63,770 nucleotides of DNA, filler included, from Octopus bimaculoides (GCF_001194135.2; 4 parts of 4 records of this genome joined end to end with filler, not necessarily neighbours in it); one strand, 5' to 3'; positions 5,037 to 54,479 are shown, counted from the first letter of the whole stretch. Notes: generated by a model not told the origin, from the letters alone. Numbers and translations are program-made.

Positions 5037-6584
5037 TTGTCTATATGTATTTATTTTGTACGTAAATTCTTTTCAATGAATGATAAAAGACTGTATTTTT
5101 AAATCCTTTATTCACTGCATTTGCTTGTATTCAAAATAAAAATAAAAAATAAACCCCTCGAGGTCGATAGAATAGAGTAACAACCAAGCTGCGAACGGAA
5201 TGGTAACTAATAATCACAATTCATACAGATGTTTCTTATATCTTTAATTAAATGTTACAATTTTTTAATATTCCAACTGCTTTAAAACTGTCGTCTGTAC
5301 GTTTAAAATTTTCAATTAAAAATTTTCAAAGCCGATCAAAAATGATCGCTATGGTCCTCGTAGGAATTAAAATCTTTATTATGATCAAAACATACAATGA
5401 AACAATACAGGACAAACAATATACAAAAATGTTATGAGAGTTCGAATAAGACATTTAAAAAAAAATTTAAATATGATATAATTTAACAGAAATAATTTTG
5501 GCTTACTTTTGCCTTTACATGAGAACATTTTTTGTTTTTAAACCAATAGTCAAACAACACAAAAGTAACAAAAGAGGTCCTCGTAGGAAGAAATGTTGGT
5601 ACTTTTTAGGGTTAAAGAATGTATTTTATTTCCGGAAAATAAATTTAAAAACAGCTTCACTCCGCAGTTTAATTAACCGGCAGTGCTCTCGTCAAATTTG
5701 AACTTCCCTCTCTGAAAGACACCCTTCAGTTTTGATCACACGTCGTTACTGGAAGGAGTGGGTCGTCACACATTCCATATATTGATACTTTCTGTGAAAA
5801 AAAATTTCTAATTTGCTCATGTGCATGGATATATACGTGTTAGAACATGTCCCTATATACACCGGCTGGCAGACGCTATTCTTATGGATATTAAAATACC
5901 TTGATTCGAACGAATGCTACAAGTAAGTGATAATTATATATATTTATAAATATATATATATATATAAGTTCAGAAGAGTGGTACAACAACACACCGATAT
6001 TTATATACCCTTATAGGGCTAGGTTTTGCTGGAAATTAATACATTTGTATTGAAATATTTTTCATTTTTATTTATATATATATAATATGAACGATAGTTT
6101 TCCGAGCTAGTAAGTGGAGTGATAAGACAAACTATAAAAAAAAAAGATAAGAGACTGTATAAAAGAACAGTAAAATGGAACTGCGAGCTTTGGCGGGCTC
6201 GTAAGCCATTTCATCCTTCCATTGTCAATATTTAATTTCATACTCATCATTCGTTATATGTACCCCACGTTTTGTGTTGTCCGTCTTTTTAATGTCCATT
6301 CTATCTTGGGGCTTTGTGTCTAAATAAAGATAGTAATAAGTGGAGCTTATTTTAAATTATTTACATTTAATTAAACATTTTTGCAAAGCATATTTATTTA
6401 CGTATTCATGTTTACCTCTATAAGAATCTTTTACTGTTCGTTTCTCTGTCCATTTGTGTTTTATCGCTGTCTGCCATTTCTGTACTTTTGGTTAGCATTG
6501 GTGTTTTATTTCTCTTGACTTATTGCTGCTTTCTGTCCCCGCCTTCGATATTTTTCGACGAATTGTTGTGCATTTTGTAATTCC

Positions 6585-35951: not shown

Positions 35952-36183
35952 GGCACATAAAAGACACCATTTCGAGCGTGGCCGTTTTCGTGCGGGTGAC
36001 ACGTAAAAGCACCCACTACACTCTCTGAGTGGTTGGCGTTAGGAAGGGCATCCAGCTGTAGAAACTCTGCCAAATCAGACTGGAGCCTGGTGTTGCCATC
36101 CGGTTTCACCAGTCCTCAGTCAAATCGTCCAACCCATGCTAGCATGGAAAGCGGACGTTAAACGATGATGATGATGATGATGA
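35952..36183 (+). mobile_element. SINE family C with RTE-like 3' end and (GAT)n tail
   Basis: ...ttggcgttaggaagggcatccagctgtagaaac...ccatgctagcatggaaagcggacgttaaacgatgatgatg; further copies at 41523-41566 (+), 50662-50890 (-) and 54250-54479 (-). Confidence 0.82.
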
Positions 36184-38012
36184 AGGTTTTGATCAGCATG
36201 ATGCTATAGTAAAAGACTTGCCCAAAGTACCATGCAGTGGGGCTGAATCTGAAATCACATGGTTGTAAAGCAAGCTTCTTAACTACACAACCATACCAGC
36301 ACCATAAAAATTGATGTTCCCTTGTCAGCAATCAAACCTGGACCACCAGGGAGAAAGACTGGAATCATCACTACTTGACTATAAATTTAACATAGCAATA
36401 CTAGTCCAGGTAACTGTCTAAAAAGAAGATAGATTGGATTGTATAAGAAAATGTGGATAATAAACCACTACATAAAATTAGCTTTTGTTTGATTAAGACA
36501 ACCTGCTTTTCCCAAATTCTGTTCTTTGGTTTTTTGCAGAAGTGGGTGGCATGCATTTGTAAAATGCCATTCAGTGAAAAGGGGAACTGAGCTACAAAAG
36601 GTTGAGAAAGAACTATGGCTCTAAAGTATAAGAAATGATAGTCAATAGAATATAATAATTATAGAATATAATAACTAACTCCTGAAATTCTGATAAAGCA
36701 ATTTCACCTATTGTTTGTTACTGGTTATTTTATTGGTCCACCTAAGATTTGAACTGAAAAACTAAAGGAACAAAACGAAATACTGTGACACATTTAATTT
36801 GGCTTCCTGCTGCCTTTATGTCTCCACAATCTGAAGTAATCACGAACTGAACTAAATACTATCCTTAGAAGAAACTGCTGTAGAATGTTTTTGTAAAAAG
36901 AAATAACTAACTTTATATCATTATTAAATTCCAGAACACACTATAATTATGAAAAACTGATATTTGTTATAAAGCAAAGCTAAGTGCAACATTCATATCA
37001 CTAAAGGAATCTAATTCAACGCCCAGTGTTTGCTTTTCATCAGCAACTAAATACAACACTCCATTCAATCAACATTTCAAATACACATACAACCTGTACT
37101 GTAATGGTAGTTTTAACTGTCATAACCAAAAAAAATTTTATATCTCATGAGGAAACACTTTTGTTTTGTTTAACATAATCATCATCATCATCACTTAAAG
37201 GGGAAAGGGTAGTGCTCATAATGCTCTTTTCAGGGCTTCTGTTACAGGTGGGAGAAAGTTATCCTCAGATTGGAAATCTGGTAGGAATATTTGCAAGAGC
37301 CTGCCATCAGAAATGCAACATTATGTCTAGTTAACATTTCAAATATACATACTATCATATGTTTAATTACATAATGAGCTCCGAGAAAGAAAAACAAACT
37401 GTTGTAACTGTAGTCTATGATCTCAGTACAACAGAATGACATTTTTCAGCCTAATGAAACAAAAAAGTCTATAAAACAAAAATAGATAAATTAAAAAACA
37501 AAATTAAATAATTAAAAGTGAACTATATGAGATTAGAGTTGAGGGCACATTGCTCTCCATCTGAAGTTACTAGAGTAGACTACATTACAAACAATAGATT
37601 AGATCTAGAAAACAAGATAGAGAACTATCATACCCAGAATTCACATAAAAACAAAGCCAAATAAACTGGTATCAGTGAATCTAATTTCATTGTACAAAAC
37701 AAAATCTATATCATTTTTAAAATATTATTTTAATTAAAACAAAAAAAAAAAAAATTGGTACTATAAGTGTCAATCAGCTGTGTAAAATTATCGACACAAG
37801 TTTAGAGCATGACAGCAAAACATGTATCAGCAGTGAGTGAGAGACAGTGATGGATTTAAAAATAACATTTTATTACAAGAAAATTAATGGAGAATAAACA
37901 GATCAAGAAATGACAAAAAAGAAAGGGTAGGGTGTCTATGAATGCAGACTTGAAACTCAAAATCCTCCACTTCATTTCCCATTCATGATACGCATATAAA
38001 AAATTTATATAT

Positions 38013-38241
38013 TTAACCCTTTAGTGTTTAAACCAGCCATATCCGGCCCAATATATTCTACATGTTTTATATTCAAACTGGCGATATCCAGCCTCTCACA
38101 CCTAACCTACATTGACATTCTAAAAATAAACAATCACATCACTGAAACCTCGAAGCTATAAGATAATGCATGATTAATTCAAAACAATTTGAGTGAAAAA
38201 ATATTACATTTAACAGAGTAATCTGAACACTAAAAGGTTAA
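38013..38241. mobile_element. piggyBac-like MITE with TTAA target duplication
   Basis: TTAA-ccctttagtgtt ... aacactaaaagg-TTAA; ~12-bp imperfect TIRs around a 221-bp non-coding interior. Confidence 0.75.
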
Positions 38242-38477
38242 CGTATTCGTTGACTGTAACTTACAGTATTTGCCTTCAAACTGAAATAGCTCTTGCTACT
38301 TACAGAACTCTACAGGCCTGTGGTAACAGAACTTTTACAGACATTGATCTCTCAATGACACAAATTTGTAGGTGCAGTATATATATAGTTTATAGATGAG
38401 AGATATTCTTTGTAGTACTCAAGATATTTAAACTTGAGCCGGTCGAGGAGTAAATCTAAAGACAAGCAAGATAGGCA

Positions 38478-38903
38478 AGTTGATATACAAAAAATATGAA
38501 ATACATTTAATACAAAAAATGTGTTATGTTTACATATGAAAAGGTCTGAATTACACAGAATCGAAATATCAGGAATTAAAGGAGCTGAATGAGAGTTTTA
38601 CAAGTCCAGCAGCTGTTTCTGGGGGCTTGGTGGTTCACAATAATGATTGTAAATTGATTCCATCATCGGATAATACCAGCCTCCATCTTCAGGGAAGAAT
38701 TTTACATTTGAGGTGTTGACAGAAAGGAGATTAAAGATGGAATGATTTTGTGGAAAACTAAGTGTATTAGAAGGTATTTAGATAGAGAATTGTGGGAGGA
38801 AAAAATAAATTTCAGGGTTAGGGGTTACTAAATTGGAACTTTTTATATGTAAACATGCACATTTTTTGTATTAAATGTATTTAATATTTTTTGTATATCG
38901 ACT
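38478..38903. repeat. ~65-bp inverted repeat with ~290-bp spacer
   Basis: 38478-38545 vs 38838-38903, about 5 differences; the right arm runs into N. Confidence 0.85.
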
Positions 38904-39798
38904 NNNNNNNNNNNNNNNNNNNNNNNNNNNNNNNNNNNNNNNNNNNNNNNNNNNNNNNNNNNNNNNNNNNNNNNNNNNNNNNNNNNNNNNNNNNNNNNNN
39001 NNATATATATATATATATATATATACACATACAAATTTGGATCAACCTCAGTATATTGTTGGTGCTTAGTTTATCAACCCTGGACAGGTGTAAATCAAAG
39101 TTGACCTACACAAGATTAGCACAGGAAATGCAGAAGAATATAACTAAATAATGAAAGGCACAGTACTAATTCTAGCACATCTCTATCTCTTTTTATCATT
39201 CTATAGCTATGAAATATTGACATCATAAGCCAAACAATGAGTAAGAAAAAGAAGAAATTAAAAATTAACTGCAGTCTAATATTGACAGCAACACTTCAAA
39301 CTCAAAGACAATGAAAAAAAGATTCTCAGTAAAAAGAAATATGAGCCATTTTCAGAGTGAAACAAAGCAGGATATAGTTAGTGACAACAGAAATAGTTAT
39401 GAAGGGATATATCAAGTGTCGTTGAGGAAATGTGGACAATAGAACAATTGTATGATTCTAGATAATCCTCAAATTTGAATACTAGTGAAAAAATGTTTTA
39501 ACTGATAATCAAATAAGAGTATATGGAAAGGAATCAGTAACTAGATACTATAAAAGATATTTTACAGATTTTGTAATTTTAGTAAATTCATATAAAAGAG
39601 GTTGTTTTGTTCATAACAAATCATACAGTCCACCCTCTCCAACACTACCTCAATCCATCTTTTGGCAGAGGTTGTTGTGCCTCTTGCAAGACTAAAGAGG
39701 ATCTACTTTTCCTTTGTTGATTCCAGTTATTTGCTTCTTCCCATACAACTGGGGGTGTAGAAACATTTCTATCAAAAAACCCAGGACTGAGAGGGAGG

Positions 39799-40545
39799 TC
39801 ACTCAGCCAAAAAAGTTCTTTCCTCCTGTAGTTGATCGGTTTGGTTTGTAGCAGGCACTACATCTACGTACCTCCGTTTTGGGGCAGGTGGTGCGTAGTC
39901 CTTTCCTTTTGGCAGGTGGTTTCTGCCCTGTTTCATGTTTATGTGGCGGGGTCTTTGGTGTGCAAAACGGCAGCCTGCACTTCCTCTCAATGCCAGCAGA
40001 CACCTTTCAAATAGAATTTGCATATTTGTGTGTGCTGTCTCTTTTCTCTTTCTATCCTTTTTGTTATATGAGTAGTCAGGTTTGCTTCTTTCTTTGGCTG
40101 TTTCATCTTTTGTTTTTGTTTTAGTTTTTCCTGCTTTTAATTCTTCTTTCTTGGCCCTTTCACCTCCATGGTTTTTCGTTTTGATGGTGGTAGGGGCACT
40201 TTCACTTGGGTTTACTTTCCGGGCAGGTTTCTTGCTTGAATCTTCTTTGTTTTCTTGAGTGTCTACCAAGTGGGGGTAACATCTTTCATCTGCATCCGTG
40301 CTCCCATCCTTGTCATCTTTGCTGTGTTTATTATCAAAGATGGCATCAAGAGTGCTGATATGGGATCGTATGAGAGCATAGGAACATGCAAACTCCTGCT
40401 TCTTTCGTTCTATCTGTGCTAATATTCTCGTGTAACCATTGCTCTTCAGCGCAGCAGTGATTATATTATTTGGGTTTTCTCCTTCAGCACAGTGCCACGC
40501 TCTCAAAAACAATGCCAATTCCATGTTTCTCCAGGTTCTGGACAT
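39799..40545 (-). CDS. Intronless 248-aa ORF: Myb/SANT-like N-terminus, Lys-rich linker, frameshift-disrupted CCCH zinc finger (gene or pseudogene, possibly TE-derived)
   Basis: Longest non-repeat ORF in the window, with start context aaaaATGt. WRNMELALFLRAW...IITAALKSNGYTRILAQIERKKQEFACSY fits the trihelix/MSANTD pattern W-x3-E...GY-x-R-x3-Q-x3-K-x3-L-x3-Y. QICKFYLKGVCWH lies in the +1 frame (40022-39990) and GCRFAH in the main frame (39975-39958). Confidence 0.6.
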   Translation of the reverse strand: MSRTWRNMELALFLRAWHCAEGENPNNIITAALKSNGYTRILAQIERKKQEFACSYALIRSHISTLDAIFDNKHSKDDKDGSTDADERCYPHLVDTQENKEDSSKKPARKVNPSESAPTTIKTKNHGGERAKKEELKAGKTKTKTKDETAKERSKPDYSYNKKDRKRKETAHTNMQILFERCLLALRGSAGCRFAHQRPRHINMKQGRNHLPKGKDYAPPAPKRRYVDVVPATNQTDQLQEERTFLAE

Positions 40546-40688
40546 TTTTGTGGTTAATTTATTAATTTATCTATCTATTTATTTATTTATTATTATTGTT
40601 TTTAAATTTTAAGTGTGATGGAGGGTAGTGAAGAAATAAAGAAAGAAAGTGTTTATATTTAGAGAGATTGACTGGCTGAGAGAAGAGA

Positions 40689-41141
<453 letters not shown>

Positions 41142-43339
41142 AGAAAGAACAGTGGAAGAGAGATTAAGGGTCTGAGAGAAGAATTATGGGATGATGGAAT
41201 GAAGTAAAAAGATAGAGAGAGAGGGTATCTACATATTTAGAGAGAAGCAATAGAGAAAGGGGAAAAGACAGTATGATGGAGAAGAGAGCGAGAGAGAGAA
41301 GTTATGTAAACTCTTGAAAAGGATTCAACTTGGATAGGCAAAAATAAATAAAGGAACAAACAATTATATACCTATCTATAACTAAAGAAATTCTCTTAAA
41401 TCAGGAATAATGAAAGTTAAACNNNNNNNNNNNNNNNNNNNNNNNNNNNNNNNNNNNNNNNNNNNNNNNNNNNNNNNNNNNNNNNNNNNNNNNNNNNNNN
41501 NNNNNNNNNNNNNNNNNNNNNNATGCTAGCATGGAAAGCGGACGTTAAACGATGATGATGATGATAGACATACGGTAAAATTGTTAAATACTTGGTAAAA
41601 TTAATAATTACCAATTAATTATTAATTTTTACCCTATGCCTGTATGAGTATATATATATAAACTCCTAAAAACAGCAAGTCGTAATTAGAGACGAGGTGC
41701 AACTTTACCTTGTCGCGTCATGCTGAAAAACAGCACTTGATTACATAAATATTTTCCCTTAATGAAAGCTCTTTTCTCCTTTGGTAGAAACAGGTGATTT
41801 TCTCTAAAGAATTTGTCAGGTATCCTACATTAGAGATAATTGCGTGTCCTTATGTGTAAGCGAAACGTAGAAGAATCTAAGAAATTCCCCCAACGTGCTT
41901 AAAGAAAACCATGAGAATTTCATAAGAGCATTATATTAGAAACGAACAGGTTTTGAGAAAAGCATCGTTGTATAGACACAAAGAAAACAGGGAAAACGAA
42001 GAGTGCCAATAGTTGGTCACATTCTGCAGTCTCGAGATATCATCAGTATATGAAAAAAAAAAGTGGGTGGGGGCATTAAGATGGACACATACAGGCGGAA
42101 GAAGGAAAGGGGGGGGGGGACCATAGGACATTTCTGAGAACAGAATTACAGACGAACACACATACTATCGAGAACACAAGACTGTTGGTGATGCAGTAAC
42201 ATGTGCAGGATGAATTGTCTATAAAATAGACATTCACTAGCCATGAAGGAAGGTAACTATGTGGTCGCTTGATCTGCTAGAAATAGCTGCCAGACTTTCT
42301 TCAAGTCTTAATCCACTGTTACAAAAAAAAAAAATTTTTTTAAATAAGAAGTGGGGATTGGATAATATAGTAAAAATAACTGAGTTCTCCTTAAATAAAT
42401 TTCGTTCACTTACAAAGGTATTCATCACACAATCTTGTTTCTAATCCTTAATAAGCTTTATTAAAACGCCGAATGAAAATACAGAGGCATCAATAAAGTG
42501 ATTAATCAAACTGCTAACAAGCAGCTTGTCTGGCTTAGTCAATAAATGAGCTCCGGAGAGGTCATTTGTCCTTTAGCACAAGGATATTTTAGAAGGCTCT
42601 TAAATATCTTTATAACTATATACATAAACGTGCGTGAGTCGTCTAAGTCATCGAAGATTCCGTTCGTTAAATTATAGCGTACAAATTACGATAGGAAATT
42701 TCAGATATTTATACCCTTGCCAATCGATCGTACACTTCAGACTATACGGCTATATGTTTATGAGAGAAAAAGAATACCAAGTTAGAATGTCTGTGTCTTT
42801 CACAAGGACATGATCGATTAATGTGTTTGGTTATATAATGCTTGGAACGGGCAAAGCAAGATGAAGATATTGCAACAAGAGAATACTTCTGCAATTCGTC
42901 AAAAATCCTTAAAATTCTCATATACATACATATATACACATGTATTTCTTTCTCGCTCTAGTTGTTTACAAATGTAAAACTATTTTAACATATAAGACTA
43001 ATGTTTCGAAAACATCTGCACAAAATTGAAAAGTTGGAAAGTAAATACAGTTTAAAATACTAATCCCCAAAACCCACTTTTTAAAAATTTAAAGATAGAC
43101 TCTGCTCTAAGGTTGGCATTAAAAAGAAGGCAAGAACACAAAAGAATAGAGTGTCGAAATATACAATTATCACGCCAATTTAACAAGTTTATCAATTGTC
43201 GTTTCCTTAGTAGGATGAAGAGACTGAGAGATCGTGAGGTTCATGCGACATACGACTTCTATAATAAAAGCCTCAAACACACGAATAAATTAAATTGTAT
43301 GTCGAGACGACATAAAATTAAATTATCTAGCATCAAGCT

Positions 43340-43411
43340 AGCTCTGACCAAGCAAACTTATTTATGATCGAGCTCTGACCAAGCAAACTTATTTATGATC
43401 GAGCTGTGACC
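43340..43411. repeat. 31-bp perfect tandem duplication
   Basis: agctctgaccaagcaaacttatttatgatcg x2 plus a partial third unit. Confidence 0.9.
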
Positions 43412-44078
43412 ATCCAATCTTATTGAATACCAGTGTCCTTTCAATTTAAGATGGCAGTGTATGAATTGAAGGAATTTGACTGTTCCTTTTAGAAGAGTGA
43501 ACGATCACAAAGTCTCCCATGTTGGCTCGGTCTCTTACCATTTGCCGACACAGGGAATCACTAGATTCCTTCGGTTCTACTATCTTCTATTAATAACTCT
43601 ATTCACATCAAGGATGCTTTACAAGTATAGTAAATCGATGCCAGTACTTGACTTGTACTCTTTTTATTGACATGAATTGTGATTCAGATTTCAAATAAAT
43701 AAAATATTTTTTATAGATAAAATTCCTCAGAGTGAGTGAAAAGGGGTTAGGTTTGTTATACGATTAACATTTTAAAGTAAACATTGTGAAACGATGATCG
43801 GAACCGGGTTGCGAACTCGGTTTCACAAGAGTTTACTTCTACTGGTATGGACACGCCTCAGTAACCACTAGATTTCATCAGAAATCGATTTCGGTTGCTA
43901 TTTAGTAATAATATTTGACATTGCCCGGGTATTAATTGCAAACATTAAAAATTACCGATGCGAAACAGAACTGAGAAATGAAGGTTCTTATGAAGAAAAT
44001 GTAATTTTCTACTGATATCTTACTATTTTATTACATATGTTTAAAAAGGAATCAAAAGGATAAAGAATTTCGACTTAC

Positions 44079-44110
44079 TGGAAAGTGTGTTCAGATGTCC
44101 ATATCCTCAT
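44079..44110 (-). CDS. PRELID3B: First coding exon of a slowmo/PRELID3-family (PRELI domain) gene
   Basis: Minus strand reads atg agg ata tgg aca tct gaa cac act ttc ca | gtaagtc = MRIWTSEHTF plus a phase-2 donor. Matches the family N-terminus M(K/R)IWTSEHxFxHPW (human MKIWTSEHVFD, fly slmo MKIWTSEHIFN). As I recall it, the family's first intron also falls after 32 coding nt. Only 10 codons are visible. Confidence 0.8.
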
Positions 44111-44164
44111 GATTCGGACGAGTGGTCAGCAGCGACGGAGATGTAGATAACGCTGAAACCACAC

Positions 44165-44210
44165 TCGGCAAAATGACGCAACAGTCATGTGACCAGCTCT
44201 ATTTATAAGG
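44165..44210 (-). promoter_or_regulatory. Putative core promoter of the slowmo-like gene
   Basis: On the minus strand: TATAAATA (44207-44200), GTCACATGAC E-box/M-box (44193-44184), TTGCGTCA bZIP-like site (44181-44174), and TCATTT initiator-like motif (44176-44171) about 30 nt after the TATA and about 60 nt before the ATG. Confidence 0.5.
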
Positions 44211-45024
44211 CTAACAGTAGAGGAAGGTAGCAAATAAGCAATATCTGCTACTTGTACTCTTATATATCTATATATTGATAACTTAGACTGAATTTAGGGG
44301 TATTTTCTGCATTAACTTCACATTTACTAACGGCTGACTTTTCTACAGGATACAGAATACAGTTAGCACCTCATTCACACAGTCTTTCTCTTTCAATGAA
44401 TGTTAAAGAAAGAGAGGAAAGCAGAAGAGAGAGAGAGAGAGGGAGAGAGACAGACAGACATTGAGAGAGAGAGAGAGAAACAGGGAGAGGAAAAACGGAG
44501 GAGAGAGATTCTTTTCTATCAATGTATTCATTATTTTCGCTTTCCGCACATTGTCAAAATACATTTATCGACCTGATGAGTTTGGGGAGCCGGTTTCTCT
44601 TCCTGATTGTCACTAATTCTCTTCATTTGTATTGTTAATGTACGTATTTCCACCGATGTCTACTTTATCTTCCATCCTTTCGAGATCAATAAAATAAGAA
44701 CTGGTTAAGTACTAAGGCTGATATTATCAACCAACCCTCAACCCCAAAATTTCAGGCCTTGTGCCTATAGTAGAAAGGATTGTTTGATGTACGTGAAAAG
44801 GGTATGAATATTGCGTAATCTAATCTCATTTCTTCTGTACGTGAAGCCAATTTAGCTGCACTATTTACCTACAAACAGCATACCCACACTCCACCTACAT
44901 CCACGTGGATAAGACCTTCTTCATACTCGTTCAATTTGTTTAGCAGGGAAACCAAAATCTTTCTCAAAATAGAAACCATTCGGTCTTACGATTCTTGTTT
45001 TGAAAACAAACATTCAGAATCAGA

Positions 45025-45600
45025 TTGGTCTCCTTGTTTAAGTTGGTGAATGCTGCCATAATCCTTACCTTTAGTTCATCTTTGGTGTCACAAGGAGTTT
45101 TGTTGGTCTCTTGCTCAACTGCACCTCACATTATAATCAAGGGTGCTGCAGTCTGGGGAGTTAGCTGGCCAGATGTTAAGAATGATGTGATCGCAGAAAT
45201 TGTCTGACAGCCATGACTGTGTTCTCCTGCATGTGTGCCATTGTACAGAGTCCTGTTACCAGACGTAGGGTCTTCCAGCAGCCACCCTCTTGACCCAGGG
45301 CAGCACTACCTCCTCCTGACACTTGATGTAGGCCTCCGTGTTGAGTCTAAGGCCGTGTGAGAAGGTGAATGGAGGCATAACGTCGCCATCACTAGTGATC
45401 ACTCCAAACACCATGATGTTGACTGGATGTTTGATTTTTATCACTCTCAGTACATGCCCTCAGATGCACTATCCTCAGAAATGTTTGTATTGGAGCTTCC
45501 AGCGCAAATGCTAGTCAGTACAGCATGTCATTTCCAAATTTCTGGCAGAGTGAATTGCATCATGGTGCTGTTTTTCTCACAGATGGTGGTCAAATGACCC
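45025..45600 (-). mobile_element. Internally deleted Tc1/mariner-group (maT/DD37D-like) transposase remnant
   Basis: KHPVNIMVFGVITSDGDVMPPF...LNTEAY...VLPWV...YVW*QDS..WHT...IWPANSPDCSTLDY; a short N-terminal-like segment at ~45560-45470 is joined directly to the catalytic part. Confidence 0.82.
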
Positions 45601-47594
45601 TACTATATACTGTGTAGTTGACAAAATCAAAAACAAATAATGCACAGTGTGCGAAATTAAAAATATAAAATGGCGACAATTTTCCCATCGCACCATGTGT
45701 ATAATTATATGTAAAGGTAAGATCCCAGGATCCAGGTGTAGGAAGTTAGTAAGCTTTGGGCAGTCCATAGAAGGTATAAAAAAACAACTTTTGGAAACAA
45801 TAGTGGTTTATTGATGTAGAAGGTTGTAAATTTTTCCCATATCGAAGTTCGATAATCTGAACAAAGTTATTTTATAGTTCACAGTTAGTATACTGGAGTA
45901 TGTGTGTGCGCACGCACGTTTGCTTTCCATTACCAGCATTGACAACCTGTCTTGGTTTGTTTATGTCCCTGTAACTTAGCAGTTCGTCAAAATGTTCTGA
46001 TCGAACAAGTACTGCATTTACCAAAATGAGTATTGGGTTGATTTGTTCTACTAAACCCTACTATGAGGTGCCCTGGAATGGCTCCAGTCCAATGGCTGAA
46101 CTTGTAAAAGATAAGAGACACCTAGCTAAATGCATACATACATACATAAATGTTGATTACCTTATCTTGTCAAATGATAACCATATAACTTTAATTAAAC
46201 TACACACAAAAAATTAATGGAGACCCAGAATGTGTTAGTGAAAGATTTATTTAGTTGAACATATGAGGGCGACAACTGCCAGTCAACTCCTGTTTTGTAG
46301 AAGCCTGCTTAACCGAGAGTCAAATTCGCTGCAGACCAGCTCCCTAGCTAGCCTGCAGCAAAGTTCCTGTCTACAGGTCATAAATCCTTGGGCAGTACCC
46401 TACAACCATCTCAATTGAGACATCTATACTTCACTGGGTTTAAAGTGAGAAAAGCTTATACAACATTTTTGTCACTCTCTTAGTTGCCAGGGCAGGTTCC
46501 AGAGGCAAGCATTGCAAGATAACTGGTATTATTTTTACTGTAAGTTTTATGTCAGAGTACCTTTCTTCTAGAAGAGATGCCTTACCACTTTGTCAAAAAT
46601 GACAGGAACTTCCTCTAGCCCTGGGAGATCTATTTAACCCATAGATGAAATCCTGACTAGTATTACCATTCTGGAGGGTCAGAACAGGTCTGGGAGAAAT
46701 GCTAATTAAGGGATAACTCTACTCTCCCATTAAATCCAGAGCTCCCAAGTATGTATGTATGACACACTGCCTAAGTAGCAATCTTATTATAATTCTGCTT
46801 GTCATTGCGTTACTTAGCCCATCGTTAATTCTTTCATGTGGTTAGAGAAAAAGAGGGAGAGAGAAATGTCCATGACATGAGGTAAAGGGAATGTAATTGT
46901 AATGTTTTCATGTGATTAGTTGAAGCGAAAAAGGAGAGAGAAGCATTTATGATGTGAGGTAGGGGGAATGTAATATTTATTACATAGTTTAAAAAGTTAG
47001 TTGAAGGTAGAGGAGGAAAGTTAAAAGCATTATTTTAGCAGAGGGGTGATGTTCTGATGGTGAGGTTAATGAAAGGCAGAGAGAGAGGGAGAGAGAGAGT
47101 GGGGGTGGTGGAGAGAGATGATGGTGGTGGTGGTGAAGATGGTGATTGGATAGTGAAAAGTGTATTTTTTAAAATTGAACAAAGGTTTTTATATCACTAA
47201 TCACTTAACACATGCGCATAAGAGCAATTCTTTGAAATATTCACGCTTATTTACATGACAGATATATGTAATTTAACTAAAGATTTTATCATATGTATGG
47301 CGTTTTTTTTTTGTTTATGAGGAAAATGGGTAAATAAGAGTGAATATTTATTTTATGAGTGCTGTGTATTAAATTTGTGAAATTGTGCATAAAGTAAATA
47401 AAGTATATATGTATAAAGTGCATTAAGTAATCATTATATTCCAATTTCCTTCATTTTTTAATAGCAGATGAGTGACTATCTTTTGATACAGACATAACAC
47501 AGGCTATGCTTTCAGGTTTTTTGGATAAAGTTTACAGAAATAACCCAATAGGTTTACCATTAATTCTGTGAAATATTCACGGGTTCTGCTAGTC

Positions 47595-47945
47595 TTAAGA
47601 AACTAGGCTTCTCAAAACCAGAAAGGAGAAAGCCGATTCAAAGACCACAGATTCAAGCCATTTCTGGAACTATAAAAATTTGTAAAACTTTCCAGAAGTT
47701 TATCATTTAAGTATATATGCACATGCCTAGACATGCAACTATATGCATGAGAATACACATATAAAACAAGCATACAAGTCTGTACATGCACTGACTCCAA
47801 ATACTGTATATATACAAACATACATGCAAAAATATCCTGCTGATGTTGAAATTCCAATGAAGAAACCTTGGATCTAAGTTAGAGACTGACTCCTCTCTAT
47901 TGGCAAGAAATTTTGAAATAAAACTGAATAATGACATACATACAC
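47595..47945 (+). mobile_element. Second, shorter copy of the RLE LINE 3' end seen at 49.7-50.0 kb
   Basis: Colinear similarity with 49700-50012 (aggcttctcaaaa...aaaactttccagaagtttatcat...ctagacatgcaactatatg...ctattggca...ctgaataatgacatacatac). Confidence 0.8.
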
Positions 47946-48835
47946 ACATGTCTGAAAAAAAGGAAGAATTGTCATCACTTGCAAGAGAGATAAGTTGGTA
48001 ACAAACTATGCTTTCATTAACTGAGGTGTAGCGAGATCAATTTCTATTATGACATATTAGAGTCAACTAGCCTTTTATATGCTCCACACGCTAAGCTTTA
48101 ATGATTAGTTGTTTGACTTATAATGTGAGTTTAGAACATTTGGTTGAGTCCTGTATTTTGATTGGTTGAGTATTGCACAGGATATGGAACTCAGATCCAA
48201 TCATGTTGTGCACAATACATTCTAGAATAACTAATCTGAATCATTGCTGGAGCCTACATCTTATATATTGAGTTAACAAAACCTCTAAAACAGAAAGGTG
48301 AGAAGATTCCAGTGGGGACGAGTCATGATATTTTCCTGCTGTTATAATGAAGAACATGTAACCAATGACAGCCAGAACTGAATTATCCAAATGATAGATG
48401 AACTATACAACCACCAGAATCCACGATGTGTTTATTTGGTCCACTGTATAATTTAGCAGAGGAATAAAGTCATGCTGTTATTTTAAAGTTATTTCTTGTG
48501 TGATTTCTACAAGTTAACATGCAACACATTATATAATGGTATGCAAAATTTTGTAATAAACCAAGAATGACTTTATATTCACTCAGCTAAAGAGGTACAT
48601 ATGTAGTCGCAAGCAGACATAACTACCCTCTCGGCCCTCCCACCCTTGAGCCAGTGGAACAATCAGAATGTGTCATCTGGAGGAAGAGAGAATTGCACCA
48701 GCATTTGGTTGGTACTCAATTCATCTGAGAAAACTGGAACACTGTAAAATGAAGTGCATTGCCCTGTGTCATAATGCGCTGCCTAGACCAGTAATCAAAC
48801 CTGCAACTTTATGATCGCGAGTCCAGTTGCCATCA

Positions 48836-48855
48836 TACATACATGAGTGCATACA

Positions 48856-48889
<34 letters not shown>

Positions 48890-48923
48890 CATACATATAT
48901 ACATACATACATACATACATACA

Positions 48924-48957
<34 letters not shown>

Positions 48958-49008
48958 CATACATATATACATACATACATACATACATACATACATACAT
49001 ACATACAT
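48836..49008. repeat. (ACAT)n microsatellite
   Basis: Direct observation. Confidence 0.95.
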
Positions 49009-49009
49009 G

Positions 49010-49270
49010 TGATGGTAGTCTCTCATAGTTTGAGAAAGACGGTTCTACAATTTCTTGCTGAAAAACTAGCACAAATGATTTGTTTATAGTGATCAAATGC
49101 ATGAGGTGAACATTAGCTCACTCCCTCCATCAAATCAACATAGCCTGAACAGGTGCACAGTGTTCCACACATCAAGTGTTGAAGTGGTTGCAGAGCAATT
49201 GGAAATAAAGTGTTTTGGCCAAGAACACAACACAACATACGAGCCAGGAACTGAAACCACAACCTTGTTG
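49010..49270 (-). mobile_element. SINE family F
   Basis: Reverse complement homologous to 35335-35590. Confidence 0.65.
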
Positions 49271-49484
49271 TTATGTTTCCCTCGGACTAACAGTCCATAT
49301 AACACTTGTGATCGTTGAGTGTAACACCCTAAACACTAGGTCATATCTATTGGAAGGATAACCCCCAAGGACAAAGAAATAAGAACCCACTGTAGGGTGG
49401 AAGCCATAGCACTCATAATAAAAAGGAGTACTGGTGAAATGTTCCAGTGAAAACCTCAATAAAATGTAAATACAAAAGACCTGA

Positions 49485-50012
49485 CATAATGATTTGGGAT
49501 AGCAAAGAGAAACTGTACAGTTATAGAAATCAGTTACCCAGCAGATGATAACATAAAGCTAAAAGAACAGTGGAAAAGAGAATACCTATGCTGAACTATT
49601 GAGAAATTTACAGTTACTCTTCCCTGATTACAAGTTCAGTTTTATACCTGTAATTATTGGGGAACTGGAATATGTAACACACTACTTAAATACCAATCTT
49701 GAGAAATTAGGCTTCTCAAAATCACAAAGGAGAAAGCTGATTTGAAGACTACAGACCCAAGCCTTCATTGGAACTGTAAAACTTTCCAGAAGTTTATCAT
49801 TTCCAGAAGTTTATGAGCATGTCTAGACATGCAACTATATGAATGAGAATACATACATAAAACAAAACATGCAAATCTGCACACATACATATGTATATGC
49901 AAAATACCCTGTTGATGTTGTTGAAATTCCCAAGAAGGGGCCTTGGATTTAGGTTAGAAACCAGCTCTTTCTCTATTGGCATGAAATTTTGAAATAAAGC
50001 TGAATAATGACA
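49485..50012 (+). mobile_element. RLE-type LINE 3' end ending in (ACAT)n
   Basis: TVIEISYPADDNI...YAELLRNLQLLFPDYKFSFIPVIIGEL...LEKLGFS; the 3' UTR ends ctgaataatgacatacatac. Confidence 0.82.
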
Positions 50013-50479
50013 TACATACATACATACATTATATATAGGTGTGTGTATGTATGTATGTATGTATATATGTATGTATGTATGCATGTATATGTGGGTATAA
50101 ATATGTGTATATATCTTTTTAATTTTGATTTACAGCTGCAGTGTCTATGTGTAAAAGAGAGAGAGAGAGAGAGTGAGAAAGGGAAGGGAGAGAGAGTGAC
50201 TGTTTTCTTTTCATGTATGTATGCTAGTATGTGTAATTCTATGTAAGAACATATTCCTTTCAACCTCTAGCTGACGACATGCTGTGTGAGCTTCCCTTAC
50301 CTGTGTAAAAATGGTGATTTGATGTAATGGGAATGGTTAGCACTATTATGTCTATAATATATTAGTTATAATCTGATTTGTTTAACCACTAAACGAGTTT
50401 AATACAACAAACTGCAGAAATACATCTGACAAAAATAATTTACTGTCGCATTTTAATGATATTATTATAAGTTGCTTCA

Positions 50480-50650
50480 TAAGGTAGTGAGCTGGCAGGA
50501 TCATTTGCATGCTGGGCAAAACGCTCAGTGGCATCTCACACAGCTTTACATTCTGAGTCCAAATTTCACCGAAGTCAACTTTTAGAGCACTGGAGTCGAT
50601 GTAATCAACTGGCACCCTTCCCTGAAATTGGGCTTGTGCTAAAATTTAAA
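50480..50650 (+). mobile_element. SINE family B
   Basis: aaggtagtgagctggcagg...ctgagtccaaatttcaccgaagtcaac. Confidence 0.75.
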
Positions 50651-50661
50651 ACCATTATTAT

Positions 50662-50890
50662 AATTTCATCATCATCATCGTCGTTTAACGTTCGCTTTCC
50701 ATGCTAGCATGGGTTGGACAATTTGACTGAGAACTGGTGAAACCAGATGGCTACACCAAGCTCCAATCTGATTTGGCAGAGCTTCTACAGCTGGATGCCC
50801 TTCCTAACGCCAACCGCTCAGAGAGTGTAGTGGGTGCTTTTACGTGCCACCGGCACGAAGGCCAGTCAGGAGGTACTGGCAACGATATTG
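50662..50890 (-). mobile_element. SINE family C
   Basis: Reverse-complement copy of 35952-36183. Confidence 0.82.
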
Positions 50891-51349
50891 GATCTCGGGC
50901 ATTAATTGGGCTAATTGGAGACATCCTGATGCTCATAAAAGTTAAAGGCAGTTAATATCATAAGAGTAGCACATACTATTTTTACTACTAGGTGACTTTA
51001 GTGCAGTACATGATGACAATTGGAAATCAAATCAATTAAAATAATGTTAATGTAAATGTTATCCACTTTTCATTGCTTCAGATGAGATATCATCCAGAAA
51101 ATAATTAAACTTCCTAAAAATTCTTCTGACAAGATATTATTCAGAAAATAATCTTACTAAAATTTCTTCTCAGATATTTAAAGTTAAATATTTATCATGG
51201 ATGACCTTCAATAGTTATAAGGAATCACAAACTTAGTTCTGCCAAAGTCTATCCCAATCAAAGTTACATAATATGTGGATAACTTGAAAGGATCTTTTCA
51301 GTTACTAATGGTGACATGAGAATCTAGATACTTTCAACAGCAAAAATAT

Positions 51350-51870
51350 ACATTCCTTACTCACATCAAAGAAACACTCCAGCCTGCCACTCTTGGTCAA
51401 GACGCAAATAAGACCAAGTTCTTATTTTCATGAAGAGGCTCTGTCACCAATGTCGCGTGGATGCTTGGTCAACATTGTTGTGGTGGTTATCTGTAGGATG
51501 TGTGTTGTATTGTTGAAGACCTTCGTTGTGTGGTCTGGCTGGCTGCGCATATAATAAATGAAGTAACTCATAAACTTCTAATTTTTAACTACTTATTGCT
51601 GGACATGATTTACTGTGTTGGCTGTTTACAAAAGAAAGATGCTGATAATATAAACACTGATTGGGATGAAAGAACTGTGCTGCATCTGGTTGAAGGCTAG
51701 TTGTGGTACATCATTTATAAGTGTCCAAAATCATCTTTGCTTTGAGGTGGTCTGAGTGCCCAATTTGATCTGGTCTTAGCAGTCTACCTTCTGTAAGTGG
51801 ACTACTTGAGTGCCCGAGGCTGCCTGCCTTACTCACTTGCCTGAGGCTGTGTAGTGAATTAGGCGCCAAA
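51350..51870 (-). mobile_element. Possible highly decayed Gypsy gag/protease remnant
   Basis: tggcgcc PBS-like motif at ~51868, then RLLRPDQIG, HPRDIGDRA (cf. gag H-x-x-FG-x-x-A) and KSGRLECFFD; many stops. Confidence 0.3.
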
Positions 51871-52689
51871 GGGTTTTTATAGGGTGAAAAGAGGACAACA
51901 ACCAGGAACGTGTGTGACTCGTAGGTTAAATGGAGTGAGAGAGGGGTTGATTTAAATGAAATCTTACACAAATAAAAATGTAACAGGTAGCTTCTTAGAT
52001 TCTAAGCTAGGATTCGAAACTGAATCTACATTTTTCTATAGATTCTCTTCTTGTTGTTCTAGGCTTTTGCACTTAGAAATTTATGAGAGTCAACTGTAAC
52101 ACTTAGGTTCTATTATTTAACTTAACATTTTTAGGTTAAATATAGTGCAAGGGAGATAAACCCATTACTTTCCATTTTTCTGATGTACATCCAGCTTTCC
52201 AGCATATGTAAGTAAAAGTAACCAAATTTGGCTTTTCCTTCTTTCTTTCAGTGCCAATGGAGGGAACACCTTATGCAAGGAACTGCACAGTGTTTACCCT
52301 CTCTACTTGTCTATACTATCTTACTCTTTCTCTCTCTCCTTTTTCCACCAGTCTTCTAGCAGTCAATAAAAGATGAAGTTAACTACCTACAGAATGGATA
52401 ACAAAATAGCAAATAACCTGTGTACAACAACAGCTTAAGGTTGTATTTTACATTGTAACAATGAAAATTAAGGACCATTTCAACCAATTAATATTTTTCT
52501 TCTCATTTTAATTGCTACATACCATTGTTAAAAAAACACAAATAACAATTTGTAAATCATTTTTTATCAATTAATGATACAAGTTGACACAAATTACAAT
52601 ATGAAATTTTAAAATATTATTTTCTGCCTTTTTTCACCAGAAAAATATCAATTATTTGTCAACATTTTCATCATCTGACATGTTGGATT

Positions 52690-53935
52690 ACTTTCTTTCA
52701 ATGCTACACTGCTTAGTTGTATTCAACCTATTGTACTCCTCAGAAATGTGTGCATTTGTCTGAAGCTGCTGAAAACACACTGCAGATTACATAGTGTAGC
52801 AGGGATGGTTGCCAACATACCAGCGATTGTGTTGAAGACCAACAGAAGCAAGATAATTTTCATCAATAGTTGGCTGTGAACCTAATAGATACATATTGTC
52901 CGTAAAAATGTTTGCGTAGATTGTCTTTTTCTGCCTTTAGAAGACCCATAACAACACGATAATGTACTGCAACAATTTGAATGTGCTCGTCTGATGTATT
53001 AGAATTGATAATGACTCATCTGCATGCAAAAAAATATATCTTAATCATTACAATTCCATAATAATCTTTTCAAGATATGTGATGGCAATCTTTGATTGGT
53101 TGATCCCATGGCACTTCCATTGCTCATTCATCAGCTAGAGCTTGCAAACGGCAAGATATTTTTCCTCTGCTTTCCTGAATGAAAATTATGATATTTTAAC
53201 TTAATTTCAGAGCAGTTTCAGACTATTTTCAAGTTATGACATTTCTAAGAATTTCCTTGGTTGCTGTAACCATTCTTTTAGCACATATAACGTAAAGTTT
53301 TCCTATTAAATATTTGCTAATGTTGTTTGAATTTACAAAACTATTTTCCAAGCACTCCAATTAAGAAGTCAAAATTGCACACGGCATTAAATAATACACT
53401 GATATCCATAAATGTATTGAAGCCTTGGTTACATTTTTTACTTCTACATTATTTTACATCTACAAGACCACCTTGTTACAATTTGAATTTTAAGGGTTCA
53501 TATTTATTCTCTATCAAATGTGATTTCAATGATTGTATGCCGTTTGGGACTGGCATTTAGAAAGTATTAGACACTACACATTATTTCTGAGGCAATGCAG
53601 AGTGGTTCAGTATCTGTCATTCTATTTTGGACAGCAAGATTTAGAAGGTGTACATGGCAATGGGCATAGCTGGCAAGTGGAGAAAATTTCTTTTACTGTT
53701 GTTGCCAACCTTCCATCAACTTCAGTCATATTTGCTACATTATCAACACATTTTCAATTTCAAGTATTTCCTGAATATATTTTTGACTAACTCACAGAGA
53801 AAACTTCTTTCTGAGAAAAGCATGGCACAAAATCTGAAGAAAGACTCTCCATTTTCTTCTTCAGCTTGACCCTACTAGTATCTGATGTTTCATCAACGAT
53901 AATAAAATATGCTTCACATGATTCTTTTACATGTT
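52690..53935 (-). pseudogene. Fossil hAT-superfamily transposase (ZMYM1-like type)
   Basis: Ordered motifs across frameshifts and stops: YFIIVDETSD (~53915-53885), CVDNVANM, YAHCHVHLLNLAV (~53665-53629), FLNASPKR, TRW, NISKYL, and the dimerization region LATIPAT...FSSFRQMHTFLRST...RLN...SIE. Confidence 0.85.
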
Positions 53936-54084
53936 TCAGTCATTTGACTGTGGCCATGCTGGAATACCGCCTTCAAAGATTTTTTAGTCAAAGAAATTTA
54001 CCACAGGGCTGAAATGGTAAAAGTGTCAATTGAATTAGATTAATGTTGTTCTTGTGACCGTTTTACTGTTAATCCTAAATCTGC

Positions 54085-54250
54085 AAGGTCATACAGGAAT
54101 GGCTGTGTGGTAAGAAGGTTGCTTCCCAACCACATGGTTCCAGGTTCAGTCCCACTGTGTGGCACCTTGGGCAAATGCCTTCTACTATATCTTCGGGCCG
54201 ACCAAAACTTTTGTGAGTGGATTTGGTTGTTGGAAACTGAAAGAAGCCCG
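54085..54250 (+). mobile_element. SINE family A 5' half
   Basis: atggctgtgtggtaagaagg...ggttcagtcccactgtgtggcacc...ggaaactgaaagaagccc. Confidence 0.85.
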
Positions 54251-54479
54251 TCATCATCATCATCATCATCATCGTTTAACGTCCGCATTCCATGCTAGCA
54301 TGGGTTGGACGATTTGACTGAGGACTGGTGAAACCGGATGGCAACACCAGGCTCCAGTCTAATTTGGCAGAGTTTCTGGATGCCCTTTCTAACGCCAACC
54401 ACTCAGAGAGTGTAGTGGGTCCTTTTACGTGTCACCCGCACGAAAACAGCCACGCTCGAAATGGTGTCTTTTATGTGCC
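54250..54479 (-). mobile_element. SINE family C, very similar to 35952-36183
   Basis: Near-identical reverse complement apart from a short deletion; ends at a gap. Confidence 0.85.

What the first reader, a model, noticed from the sequence alone, without database searches (positions are those of the whole stretch)
39799..40545. Intronless Myb/SANT-like ORF with a hidden CCCH zinc finger, nested downstream of the slowmo first exon
Seen: a 248-codon open frame. Its first ~70 aa fit the trihelix/MSANTD pattern (W..E.L.LF...W ... GY.R...Q...K...F...Y, then LDAIF), followed by a Lys/Glu-rich linker. At 40022-39990 the +1 frame reads (TQI)CKFYLKGVCWH, and the main frame resumes with LRGSAGCRFAH. 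Together these give C-x7-C-x8-C-x3-H. PKGKDYA further on may be a second decayed finger. Known: Myb/SANT-like proteins are the DNA-binding partner of PIF/Harbinger transposons and the source of domesticated MSANTD genes; CCCH fingers bind RNA and resemble motifs I recall from some invertebrate LINE ORF1 proteins. Inference: a DNA-binding plus RNA-binding chimera with no transposase or RT nearby, in which two compensating frameshifts keep the ORF open while destroying the finger. It could be a domesticated TE gene, a retrocopy, an assembly error, or a protein whose finger needs a frame change. I know of no described family with this architecture.
Basis: partly seen in the sequence, partly recalled or inferred. 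Interest (0 to 1): 0.78.

Follow-up and report, generated by a model that had tools for sequence, protein, structure and literature searches.

The report
Broken LINE retrotransposon ORF1 fragment
The 248-codon reading frame is the decayed front end (5' leader plus first gene, ORF1) of an octopus LINE retrotransposon that has lost its reverse-transcriptase gene, so it is ordinary repeat debris and not a new host gene.

Summary
A 248-codon ORF lies at 39799-40545 (-), far longer than chance allows. The half finger CKFYLKGVCWH sits in another frame at 40022-39990.

Related copies explain it. In seven of seven homologous loci from Octopus vulgaris, O. sinensis and unnamed read or metagenome assemblies, the same protein lies directly upstream of an endonuclease plus reverse-transcriptase ORF. 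It is therefore ORF1 of a LINE.

Intact relatives carry the N-terminal domain and an in-frame C-x7-C-x8-C-x3-H finger.

Against four copies of its own subfamily, the window copy has a 7-nt insertion (~40046-40052) and a 1-nt deletion (~39979/39980). Together these keep the frame open but scramble the finger. It also has a TGA in the old finger frame and an in-frame 18-nt deletion.

Homology ends at ~39808, so the stop codon comes from unrelated flank. No endonuclease or RT remnant exists anywhere in the piece.

The Myb/SANT call is weak. Pfam hits are sub-threshold only, and a confident four-helix model has no structural match.

Verdict: a dead, 3'-truncated LINE copy. The only mild novelty is that this ORF1 type (helical domain plus atypical CCCH) was not in the ORF1 classifications I could read.

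The parts
39799..40545 (-). 248-codon ORF. It is a decayed ORF1 of a LINE; the last two sense codons and the stop come from the flank.
   Evidence: homology to ORF1 of LINE copies
40318..40545 (-). N-terminal conserved four-helix domain of ORF1p (aa 1-76)
   Evidence: Family alignments A1/A4. AF2 gives pLDDT 86.2 and helices 3-19, 25-35, 42-60, 63-75. PF13837 is sub-threshold only, in 4 of 24 members. No Foldseek match.
40046..40052 (-). Copy-specific 7-nt insertion (GAAAGAG next to AAAAGAG). This is the first frameshift; its placement within the short repeat is ambiguous.
   Evidence: Absent from L010, L004, L006 and L003
39958..40022 (-). Remnant of the CCCH finger (C-x7-C-x8-C-x3-H), split between two frames
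   Evidence: intact in-frame finger in P0017, P0021 and L010
39987..39989 (-). TGA in the ancestral finger frame, where relatives have GGA (Gly)
39979..39980 (-). Site of the copy-specific 1-nt deletion. This second frameshift returns the reading to the ancestral frame.
39856..39876 (-). Conserved ORF1 motif RRYVDVV, matching the family motif [RK][KRW]Y.D.V
39799..39808 (-). End of LINE homology, i.e. the 3' truncation point at ~39808. The codons A-E-stop come from unrelated sequence.
   Evidence: MAFFT alignment; blastn extents; no APE/RT hit in the whole piece at E<=1 or by tblastx; no LINE 3'-end motif downstream of the ORF (single weak hit at 53952-53968 only)
40546..41310 (-). LINE 5' leader. 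It holds an AT-rich (ATAG/ATAA)n stretch, a (CT)n run at 40678-40794 and four or more CT-rich monomers carrying TTCTCTCAG.C..TCAA. The upstream limit is approximate and is interrupted by N at 41063-41089.
   Evidence: Shared with L010 up to 40793; motif found 4 times at 40684-41180 on this strand only; sequence; CT-rich leaders precede ORF1 in L001 and L002 and in the translated upstream part of P0025

Best explanation
The feature is the 5' part (tandem-monomer leader plus ORF1) of a non-LTR (LINE) retrotransposon of octopods. In working elements, ORF1 encodes a protein of about 330-370 aa. That protein has an N-terminal four-helix domain, a Lys/Glu-rich linker, one atypical CCCH zinc finger (C-x7-C-x8-C-x3-H), a [RK]KY.D.V motif and a C-terminal helix. 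Its end overlaps the start of ORF2, which encodes an apurinic-type endonuclease and a reverse transcriptase. By analogy with other LINE ORF1 proteins, it would bind the element's own RNA and form the particle that ORF2p copies into the genome; this step is inferred and not shown. The window copy is dead. A 7-nt insertion and a 1-nt deletion 65 nt apart put 24 codons, including the first half of the finger, out of frame. Together they leave the long frame open. The old finger frame has gained a TGA, 18 nt are deleted in frame near the end, and everything from ~39808 onward (the ORF1 tail, ORF2 and the 3' end) is missing. The frame therefore runs two codons into unrelated DNA and stops. The long ORF is best read as a young or lucky pseudogene, not a selected gene.
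For: The exhaustive phmmer search found 25 relatives, 10 of them at E<=1e-10. They come from O. vulgaris, O. sinensis and O. bimaculoides and lie on different chromosomes. Seven of seven loci examined (L001-L006, L010) carry APE or RT ORFs directly downstream on the same strand. Pfam Exo_endo_phos_2 and RVT_1 score above cutoff. L005 shows an intact 371-aa ORF1 overlapped by 13 nt by ORF2. L010 reads from the N-terminal domain to an intact finger in a single frame. The window-specific +7 and -1 indels are seen against three or four paralogues. Window homology to four copies of its own subfamily stops at 39808-39846, while those copies continue into APE. No APE/RT signal exists anywhere in 35952-54479. 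The 5' leader is shared with L010. Distant full-length relatives (RT about 47% identical; L011, L012, L013) also have an ORF1 whose first CCCH finger aligns with invariant C, F, C, H, C, H.
Against: LINE copies are usually truncated at the 5' end, not the 3' end. This copy therefore needs a secondary deletion or rearrangement that I could not document. No target-site duplication or 3' tail can be shown for it. Two indels that exactly compensate within 65 nt, leaving a 248-codon ORF with its original ATG, could in principle reflect selection to keep a frame open. A paralogous copy supplies the first exon of an O. bimaculoides gene model (P0026), so some copies are transcribed. The genome-wide copy number and the LINE clade were not determined.
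Confidence: 0.9

Rival explanations
1. It is a domesticated or otherwise functional ORF1-derived host gene or exon. The N-terminal helical domain would be kept, the finger discarded, and the frame held open by a compensating indel.
For: The ORF is open for 248 codons with its original ATG. The two frameshifts compensate. A paralogous copy is annotated as the first exon of LOC106870161 in O. bimaculoides. Another copy is exonised in an O. sinensis LPIN3 model.
Against: No gene with this product is on record. The only close relative, P0026 (87% identical over 88 aa), is frameshifted relative to this ORF after residue ~87. The stop codon comes from random flank. The 24 out-of-frame codons have roughly a 0.3 chance of staying open by chance, estimated from the stop frequency. 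All other copies are visibly decayed.
Confidence: 0.04
2. The indels, or the truncation, are assembly or sequencing errors, and the real locus holds an intact ORF1 or a full LINE.
For: The piece contains N gaps at 38904-39002, 41063-41089 and 41423-41522. Repeats of this kind are hard to assemble.
Against: No gap lies at the indels or at the ~39808 junction; about 800 bp of unique-looking sequence follow before the first gap. A 7-nt duplication and a G-to-T change are not typical sequencing errors. The other copies carry their own, different lesions.
Confidence: 0.04
3. It is the Myb/SANT-like partner gene of a PIF/Harbinger DNA transposon, or an MSANTD-type derivative, as the reader first suggested.
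For: Sub-threshold but co-linear PF13837 hits appear in 4 of 24 family members. The G[YF].R...Q...K...F...Y pattern is present.
Against: Every homologous locus is attached to APE+RT, not to a DDE transposase. No inverted repeats flank the ORF. The window ORF itself has no Pfam Myb hit at E<=10. There is no structural match.
Confidence: 0.01
4. The finger is made by programmed ribosomal frameshifting or editing, so the protein is functional as encoded.
For: Both halves of the finger are present in adjacent frames.
Against: Paralogues encode the finger in one frame. The indels are specific to this copy. The finger frame contains a TGA between its second and third cysteines.
Confidence: 0.01

Closest known systems
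ORF1 of CR1/L2-lineage LINEs (Jockey superfamily), especially the PHD-containing 'type III' and the unclassified 'type V' of Khazina & Weichenrieder / Metcalfe & Casane (PMC4120745)
   Same: It is the first ORF of an APE+RT LINE and overlaps ORF2. It has a modular zinc-binding nucleic-acid-binding architecture. Distant relatives of the same RT group (L011, L012) have a PHD-like N-terminus followed by CCCH fingers. A tandem-monomer 5' leader is also reported for CR1-group elements (PMC13343379). In L001 and L002 the 3' end is followed by a short repeat or TA-rich tail, not poly(A), with (AATC)n clear in one copy.
   Different: The octopus ORF1 has a four-helix domain in place of PHD and only one finger, of the CCCH type, not the CCHC type. 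CCCH does not appear at all in the text of PMC4120745 or PMC13343379. Clade assignment by RT phylogeny was not done.
HAL1 (half-L1) elements of mammals, which are ORF1-only LINE derivatives (from my own knowledge)
   Same: Both are a LINE unit that retains the 5' region and ORF1 but lacks ORF2.
   Different: HAL1 is a propagating family with its own 3' end. Here only this one copy is known to lack ORF2. It shows no 3' end or tail, and its four subfamily relatives all keep ORF2.
CCCH (C-x8-C-x5-C-x3-H, PF00642) RNA-binding zinc fingers, e.g. the PARP12/ZAP type (PF25261)
   Same: The Cys-Cys-Cys-His order matches, as do the aromatic after the first Cys, the Gly-rich loop and the C-x3-H ending. 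The best Pfam hits are to these families.
   Different: The middle spacing of 8 lies outside the usual 4-6. All hits are below Pfam cutoffs (E 0.001-0.07). No metal- or RNA-binding data exist.
Myb/SANT-like domains (Myb_DNA-bind_4, PF13837; trihelix, MSANTD, Harbinger Myb-like protein)
   Same: It is an all-helical domain of similar length with a G[YF].R(T)..Q...K...[FL]...Y motif. Sub-threshold co-linear profile hits occur.
   Different: The second and third signature tryptophans are missing. No member reaches the cutoff. The AF2 model (pLDDT 86) finds no Myb/SANT structure in PDB. The genetic context is a LINE, not a DNA transposon.
RTE-2_OV, the octopus brain-expressed LINE (PMC9115989)
   Same: It is an octopus LINE with APE and RT.
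   Different: RTE-2_OV has a single ORF with a C2H2 finger and belongs to the RTE clade. It is a different element.

Membership tests
Non-LTR (LINE) retrotransposon, ORF1 region | Homologous copies lie directly upstream of, and on the same strand as, an APE endonuclease + reverse transcriptase ORF | tested here: met
   Met in 7 of 7 loci (L001-L006, L010). Pfam RVT_1 and Exo_endo_phos_2 score above cutoff.
Non-LTR (LINE) retrotransposon, ORF1 region | Dispersed, multi-copy, with variously decayed copies | tested here: met
   25 clusters at 50% identity. Copies lie on four different O. vulgaris chromosome records, two O. sinensis records and one O. bimaculoides record. Each copy has its own frameshifts. 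No genome-wide count was possible.
Non-LTR (LINE) retrotransposon, ORF1 region | This copy itself carries ORF2 and a 3' end or tail | tested here: not met
   No APE/RT hit in 35952-54479. The 3'-end motif is absent downstream. Homology stops at ~39808. The copy is a fragment, not an element.
Non-LTR (LINE) retrotransposon, ORF1 region | Clade assignment (CR1/L2 lineage) by RT phylogeny | not tested
   No reference RT set was available. The only indirect hints are the non-poly(A) 3' ends of L001/L002, with (AATC)n in one copy, PHD-like ORF1 in relatives and the C-terminal ORF2 motifs.
CCCH zinc finger | Ordered Cys, Cys, Cys, His ligands conserved across homologues | tested here: met
   C, F, C, H, C, H are invariant in alignment A5, which includes distant relatives.
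CCCH zinc finger | Score above Pfam gathering threshold, with canonical C-x4-15-C-x4-6-C-x3-H spacing | tested here: not met
   The best hit is PF25261 at E=0.0011, 19.5 bits against a cutoff of 27. P0017 and P0021 are sub-threshold too. The middle spacing is 8.
CCCH zinc finger | Finger encoded in frame in this copy | tested here: not met
   It is split by the +7/-1 indels and carries a TGA.
CCCH zinc finger | Binds zinc and RNA | not testable with these tools
   Needs biochemistry.
Myb/SANT-like DNA-binding domain (PF13837 and relatives) | Profile match above threshold | tested here: not met
   The window ORF has no hit at E<=10. Four of 24 members hit at E 0.004-0.1, 13.5-17.9 bits against a cutoff of 27.
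Myb/SANT-like DNA-binding domain (PF13837 and relatives) | Three-helix Myb/SANT fold | tested here: inconclusive
   AF2 gives a confident four-helix domain. Foldseek finds no PDB match better than E=2 and no Myb/SANT entry among the hits listed. A profile search of PDB sequences finds none.
PIF/Harbinger Myb-like partner gene | Terminal inverted repeats and a DDE transposase ORF in the same element | tested here: not met
   No flanking inverted repeats. Relatives carry APE+RT instead.
Domesticated TE-derived host gene | Single orthologous locus with a conserved intact ORF under purifying selection | not testable with these tools
   No cephalopod genome could be searched by DNA. The exact product is not on record. 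The nearest relative, P0026, is frameshifted relative to it.

The most novel reading that the evidence does not exclude
The double-frameshifted ORF may not be debris. It could belong to an expressed, ORF1-only, finger-less lineage that octopus genomes use as a promoter or first coding exon or as a small helical-domain protein. This would resemble the paralogue that starts the O. bimaculoides LOC106870161 gene model. Separately, and more probably (about 0.35), the intact family may represent an undescribed LINE ORF1 class: a Myb-like four-helix domain plus an atypical CCCH finger, derived from PHD plus triple-CCCH ORF1s.
Probability: 0.04. Interest if true: 0.5.

Novelty: new member of a known kind. 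Interest (0 to 1): 0.17.

Why it matters
For the window, the result removes a candidate. The ORF should be masked as LINE sequence, not annotated as a gene. The same family has already leaked into public gene models: hypothetical proteins in O. vulgaris and O. sinensis, a chimeric first exon in O. bimaculoides and an LPIN3 terminal exon.

More broadly, published ORF1 classifications list RRM, CCHC, coiled-coil/CTD, PHD and esterase modules. An ORF1 built on CCCH fingers, with a helical domain swapped in for PHD in octopods, is another example of modular ORF1 evolution. It belongs to a group with more than 6500 RT relatives in public data. That interest is modest and specialist.

Tried and rejected
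- The word-indexed protein search with the ORF found nothing, and the exact-product look-up found nothing.
- Pfam on the ORF gave no meaningful hit.
- A whole-ORF AF2 model was poor (pLDDT 59.7), and its Foldseek hits were meaningless.
- The domain-only model was good (pLDDT 86) but had no significant PDB or viral-structure match. A profile search of PDB sequences also gave nothing relevant.
- I looked for a slowmo/PRELI exon in the piece by motif and found none.
- I looked for ORF2 remnants and for the LINE 3'-end motif downstream of the ORF, to test an 'internally deleted, HAL1-like' structure. Neither was present.
- DNA for the P0026 locus could not be fetched because the gene range is too long. 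The closest copy could therefore not be compared at the indel sites.
- The RT search gave no names that inform the clade.
- Literature searches for CCCH in LINE ORF1 returned only host restriction factors such as ZAP and ZCCHC3.
- Retrocopy of a host mRNA was rejected: there is no poly(A), and the copies are joined to ORF2.

Full report
**1. The observation**

The minus strand of 39799-40545 carries an ATG-initiated ORF of 248 codons.
- It is the only long ORF in the piece (35952-54479). Apart from translated simple repeats, the next open stretches are about 110 codons.
- None of 20000 shuffles of the ORF stays open, and composition gives P of about 5e-7.
- The second frame reads TQICKFYLKGVCWH-TGA at exactly 40022-39990, and the main frame continues LRGSAGCRFAH.

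**2. Relatives exist, and they are octopus repeats**

The word-indexed search found nothing. An exhaustive phmmer scan of 1.84 billion representatives found 25 relatives, 10 of them at E<=1e-10. Most are short and 40-54% identical.

The named ones are 'hypothetical' or 'uncharacterized' proteins. They come from Octopus vulgaris (four different chromosome records), O. sinensis and O. bimaculoides. The rest come from read-archive or metagenome assemblies.

The finger is therefore a real family feature and not a chance pattern.

**3. What the family is**

I fetched DNA for seven loci:
- L001: O. vulgaris.
- L002 and L010: O. sinensis.
- L003, L004 and L006: Logan read assemblies.
- L005: a metagenome scaffold.

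In every one, the homologue is followed on the same strand by an apurinic-type endonuclease. Where the contig is long enough, a reverse transcriptase follows too. Pfam RVT_1 (E=8e-31) and Exo_endo_phos_2 (E=1e-13) score above cutoff.

L005 looks intact. ORF1 (P0017) occupies 75-1190, and ORF2 starts at 1178 in another frame, a 13-nt overlap. The L001/L002 family ends in ...GGCGGTGCCCCAGCATGGCC...GGCTGAAAC. Short repeats or TA-rich sequence follow, clearly (AATC)n in one of three copies, and there is no poly(A). 5'-truncated copies are present.

The family is thus ORF1 of a two-ORF LINE. More than 6500 RT relatives at E<=1e-20 exist in public data. The closest named one is from Argonauta hians.

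**4. Anatomy of the window copy**

Four loci belong to the window's own subfamily: L003, L004, L006 (its duplicates L007-9 come from other samples) and L010. They are 65-72% identical in DNA.
- Their homology with the window begins in the leader (up to 40793 for L010) and ends at 39831-39846 by blastn. In the multiple alignment it ends at ~39808.
- All four copies then continue into the ORF1 tail and the endonuclease.
- The window continues into unrelated sequence. No APE or RT signal exists anywhere in the piece, even at E<=1. The LINE 3'-end motif is also absent downstream of the ORF (single weak hit at 53952-53968 only).

The copy is therefore 3'-truncated, and its last two sense codons and stop (39799-39807) come from the flank.

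Upstream of the ATG lie an AT-rich stretch, a (CT)n run and at least four CT-rich monomers carrying TTCTCTCAG.C..TCAA on this strand only. L010 shares this leader. CT-rich leaders also precede ORF1 in L001, L002 and P0025. The fragment spans roughly 39808-41310.

**5. The frameshifts**

Pairwise alignments with L010, L004 and L006 show two lesions private to the window:
- an extra 7 nt (GAAAGAG beside AAAAGAG, ~40046-40052);
- a missing nucleotide in GAGGAAG-TGC (~39979/39980).

The 24 codons between them are read out of frame. This is why the first half of the finger appears in another frame.

In L010, one frame runs from the N-terminal domain through CRFYLRGACRHGEEDVGCRFAHP, so the ancestral state is a single frame. 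The old frame in the window has also acquired TGA where relatives have GGA. An 18-nt in-frame deletion removes the AAAEQE segment near the end.

The out-of-frame stretch had roughly a 0.3 chance of lacking stops, estimated from the stop frequency. A second indel restores the frame about one time in three. The open frame therefore does not need selection to explain it.

**6. The domains**

N-terminal region (76 aa):
- It is the most conserved part of the family, with 55% mean column identity.
- AF2 with the family alignment gives a confident four-helix domain: pLDDT 86, pTM 0.69.
- Foldseek finds nothing better than E=1.5-2 in PDB or BFVD.
- A profile search of PDB sequences finds nothing relevant.
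- Pfam gives no hit for the window ORF. Four of 24 members hit Myb_DNA-bind_4 co-linearly but below threshold: E 0.004-0.1, at most 17.9 bits against a cutoff of 27.

The Myb/SANT reading is plausible but unproven.

The finger scores only sub-threshold against CCCH models, even in intact members, because the middle spacing is 8 instead of the usual 4-6.

The suggested second finger (PKGKDYA) has no Cys/His counterpart in intact octopus members.

**7. Wider relatives**

Three full-length elements (L011, L012, L013) have RT about 47% identical to L001. L011 is from another metagenome; L012 and L013 are from Logan runs. Their ORF1s are 406 aa (L011) and 361 aa (L012 and L013).
- Each ORF1 has a PHD-like Cys/His N-terminus, sub-threshold in L011 (PHD_4 E=0.009) and undetected by Pfam in L012, followed by three CCCH-like fingers.
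- Their first finger aligns with the octopus finger, with C, F, C, H, C, H invariant.
- The second finger of L011, GCSKGKDCDKFHP, resembles the window's HLPKGKDYAPPAP. The octopus lineage may therefore have lost further fingers long ago, in the working element. This is speculation.

The octopus ORF1 thus looks like a module swap (helical domain for PHD) on a CCCH-based ORF1. That fits the modular ORF1 evolution described for CR1/L2/Jockey elements (PMC4120745). CCCH does not appear in the text of that paper or of a 2026 CR1-group survey (PMC13343379). Literature searches for CCCH in LINE ORF1 returned only host factors such as ZAP. The octopus LINE described in brain, RTE-2_OV, is a different, single-ORF element with a C2H2 finger (PMC9115989).

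**8. Mechanism**

Shown:
- The family is joined to APE+RT.
- ORF1 overlaps ORF2.
- The finger ligands are conserved.
- This copy is broken and truncated.

Inferred from what is known of LINE ORF1 proteins:
- The intact protein binds the element's RNA through the CCCH finger and the basic linker, and forms the particle used for target-primed reverse transcription.
- The helical domain may bind nucleic acid or mediate assembly.
- The window copy can do none of this.

How ORF2 was lost (deletion, rearrangement, or a large insertion reaching beyond the piece) is unknown.

**9. Verdict**

This is an ordinary decayed LINE fragment.

The residual interest is twofold. The ORF1 architecture is not covered by the published classifications I could read. 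Copies of it also contaminate octopus gene models (P0026, P0014, P0001, P0004, P0021).

No step had to be withheld.

Noticed in passing
window 35952-36183, 41523-41565, 50656-50884, 54251-54479: There are four copies or fragments of a ~230-bp SINE-like repeat ending in ...GCTAGCATGGAAAGCGGACGTTAAACGATGATGATGAT. They form long inverted pairs across the piece (94-98% complementary). The same repeat occurs in the O. vulgaris and O. sinensis loci at 75-95% identity.
   Followed up: partly
P0026 (O. bimaculoides LOC106870161; no DNA fetched): This is a 462-aa gene model spanning 225 kb. Its first ~88 residues are a paralogous copy of this ORF1 N-terminus (87% identical). It then reads a shifted ORF1 frame and splices into DUF4600 coiled-coil exons. 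This is either LINE-driven exonisation or alternative-promoter use, or an annotation artefact.
   Followed up: partly
L010 45468-48757 (O. sinensis VCDQ01000708.1): The partial LPIN3 model (P0014) ends with ~70 residues translated from the ORF1 linker of a LINE copy of the window's subfamily. The lipin model has absorbed repeat sequence.
   Followed up: partly
L011 658-1878; L012 953-2038; L013 291-1376: Distant relatives of the same RT group encode ORF1s with a PHD-like N-terminus and three tandem CCCH-like fingers. None is recognised by Pfam at threshold. This ORF1 type was not in the ORF1 surveys I read.
   Followed up: partly
L005 ~300-560 (P0017 residues ~63-155): The intact ORF1 P0017 contains an internal tandem duplication of ~45 aa (PHMK.LDEI.GNT..VETSKNGPTCSVE.QGGAANKGAGKA) just after the helical domain.
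   Followed up: no
window 47593-47951 and 49697-50031: A ~430-bp segment is present twice about 2.1 kb apart, in the same orientation, at 80-100% identity in blocks (repeat families D7, D10, D11, D13, D17). It is either a local duplication or two copies of an unidentified repeat.
   Followed up: no
window 43340-43432: A 31-nt unit (AGCTCTGACCAAGCAAACTTATTTATGATCG) is repeated three times in tandem. The first two copies are identical and the third is 71% identical.
   Followed up: no
window 48834-49010 and 50030-50121: A (CATA)n microsatellite and a (TATG)n-type run about 1 kb away form an imperfect inverted pair.
   Followed up: no
window 38017-38241, 44674-44784, 45026-45219, 49055-49259, 54099-54254: Further short interspersed repeats are shared at 75-84% identity with unrelated positions of the O. 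sinensis contig L010. Their families were not identified.
   Followed up: no
L001 9900-17050: Two LINE copies of related subfamilies lie head to tail. The first has ORF1 and the second is 5'-truncated at the endonuclease, with an N gap between them. A 145-bp 3'-end fragment lies at 5096-5239 and carries an (AATC)n tail.
   Followed up: partly
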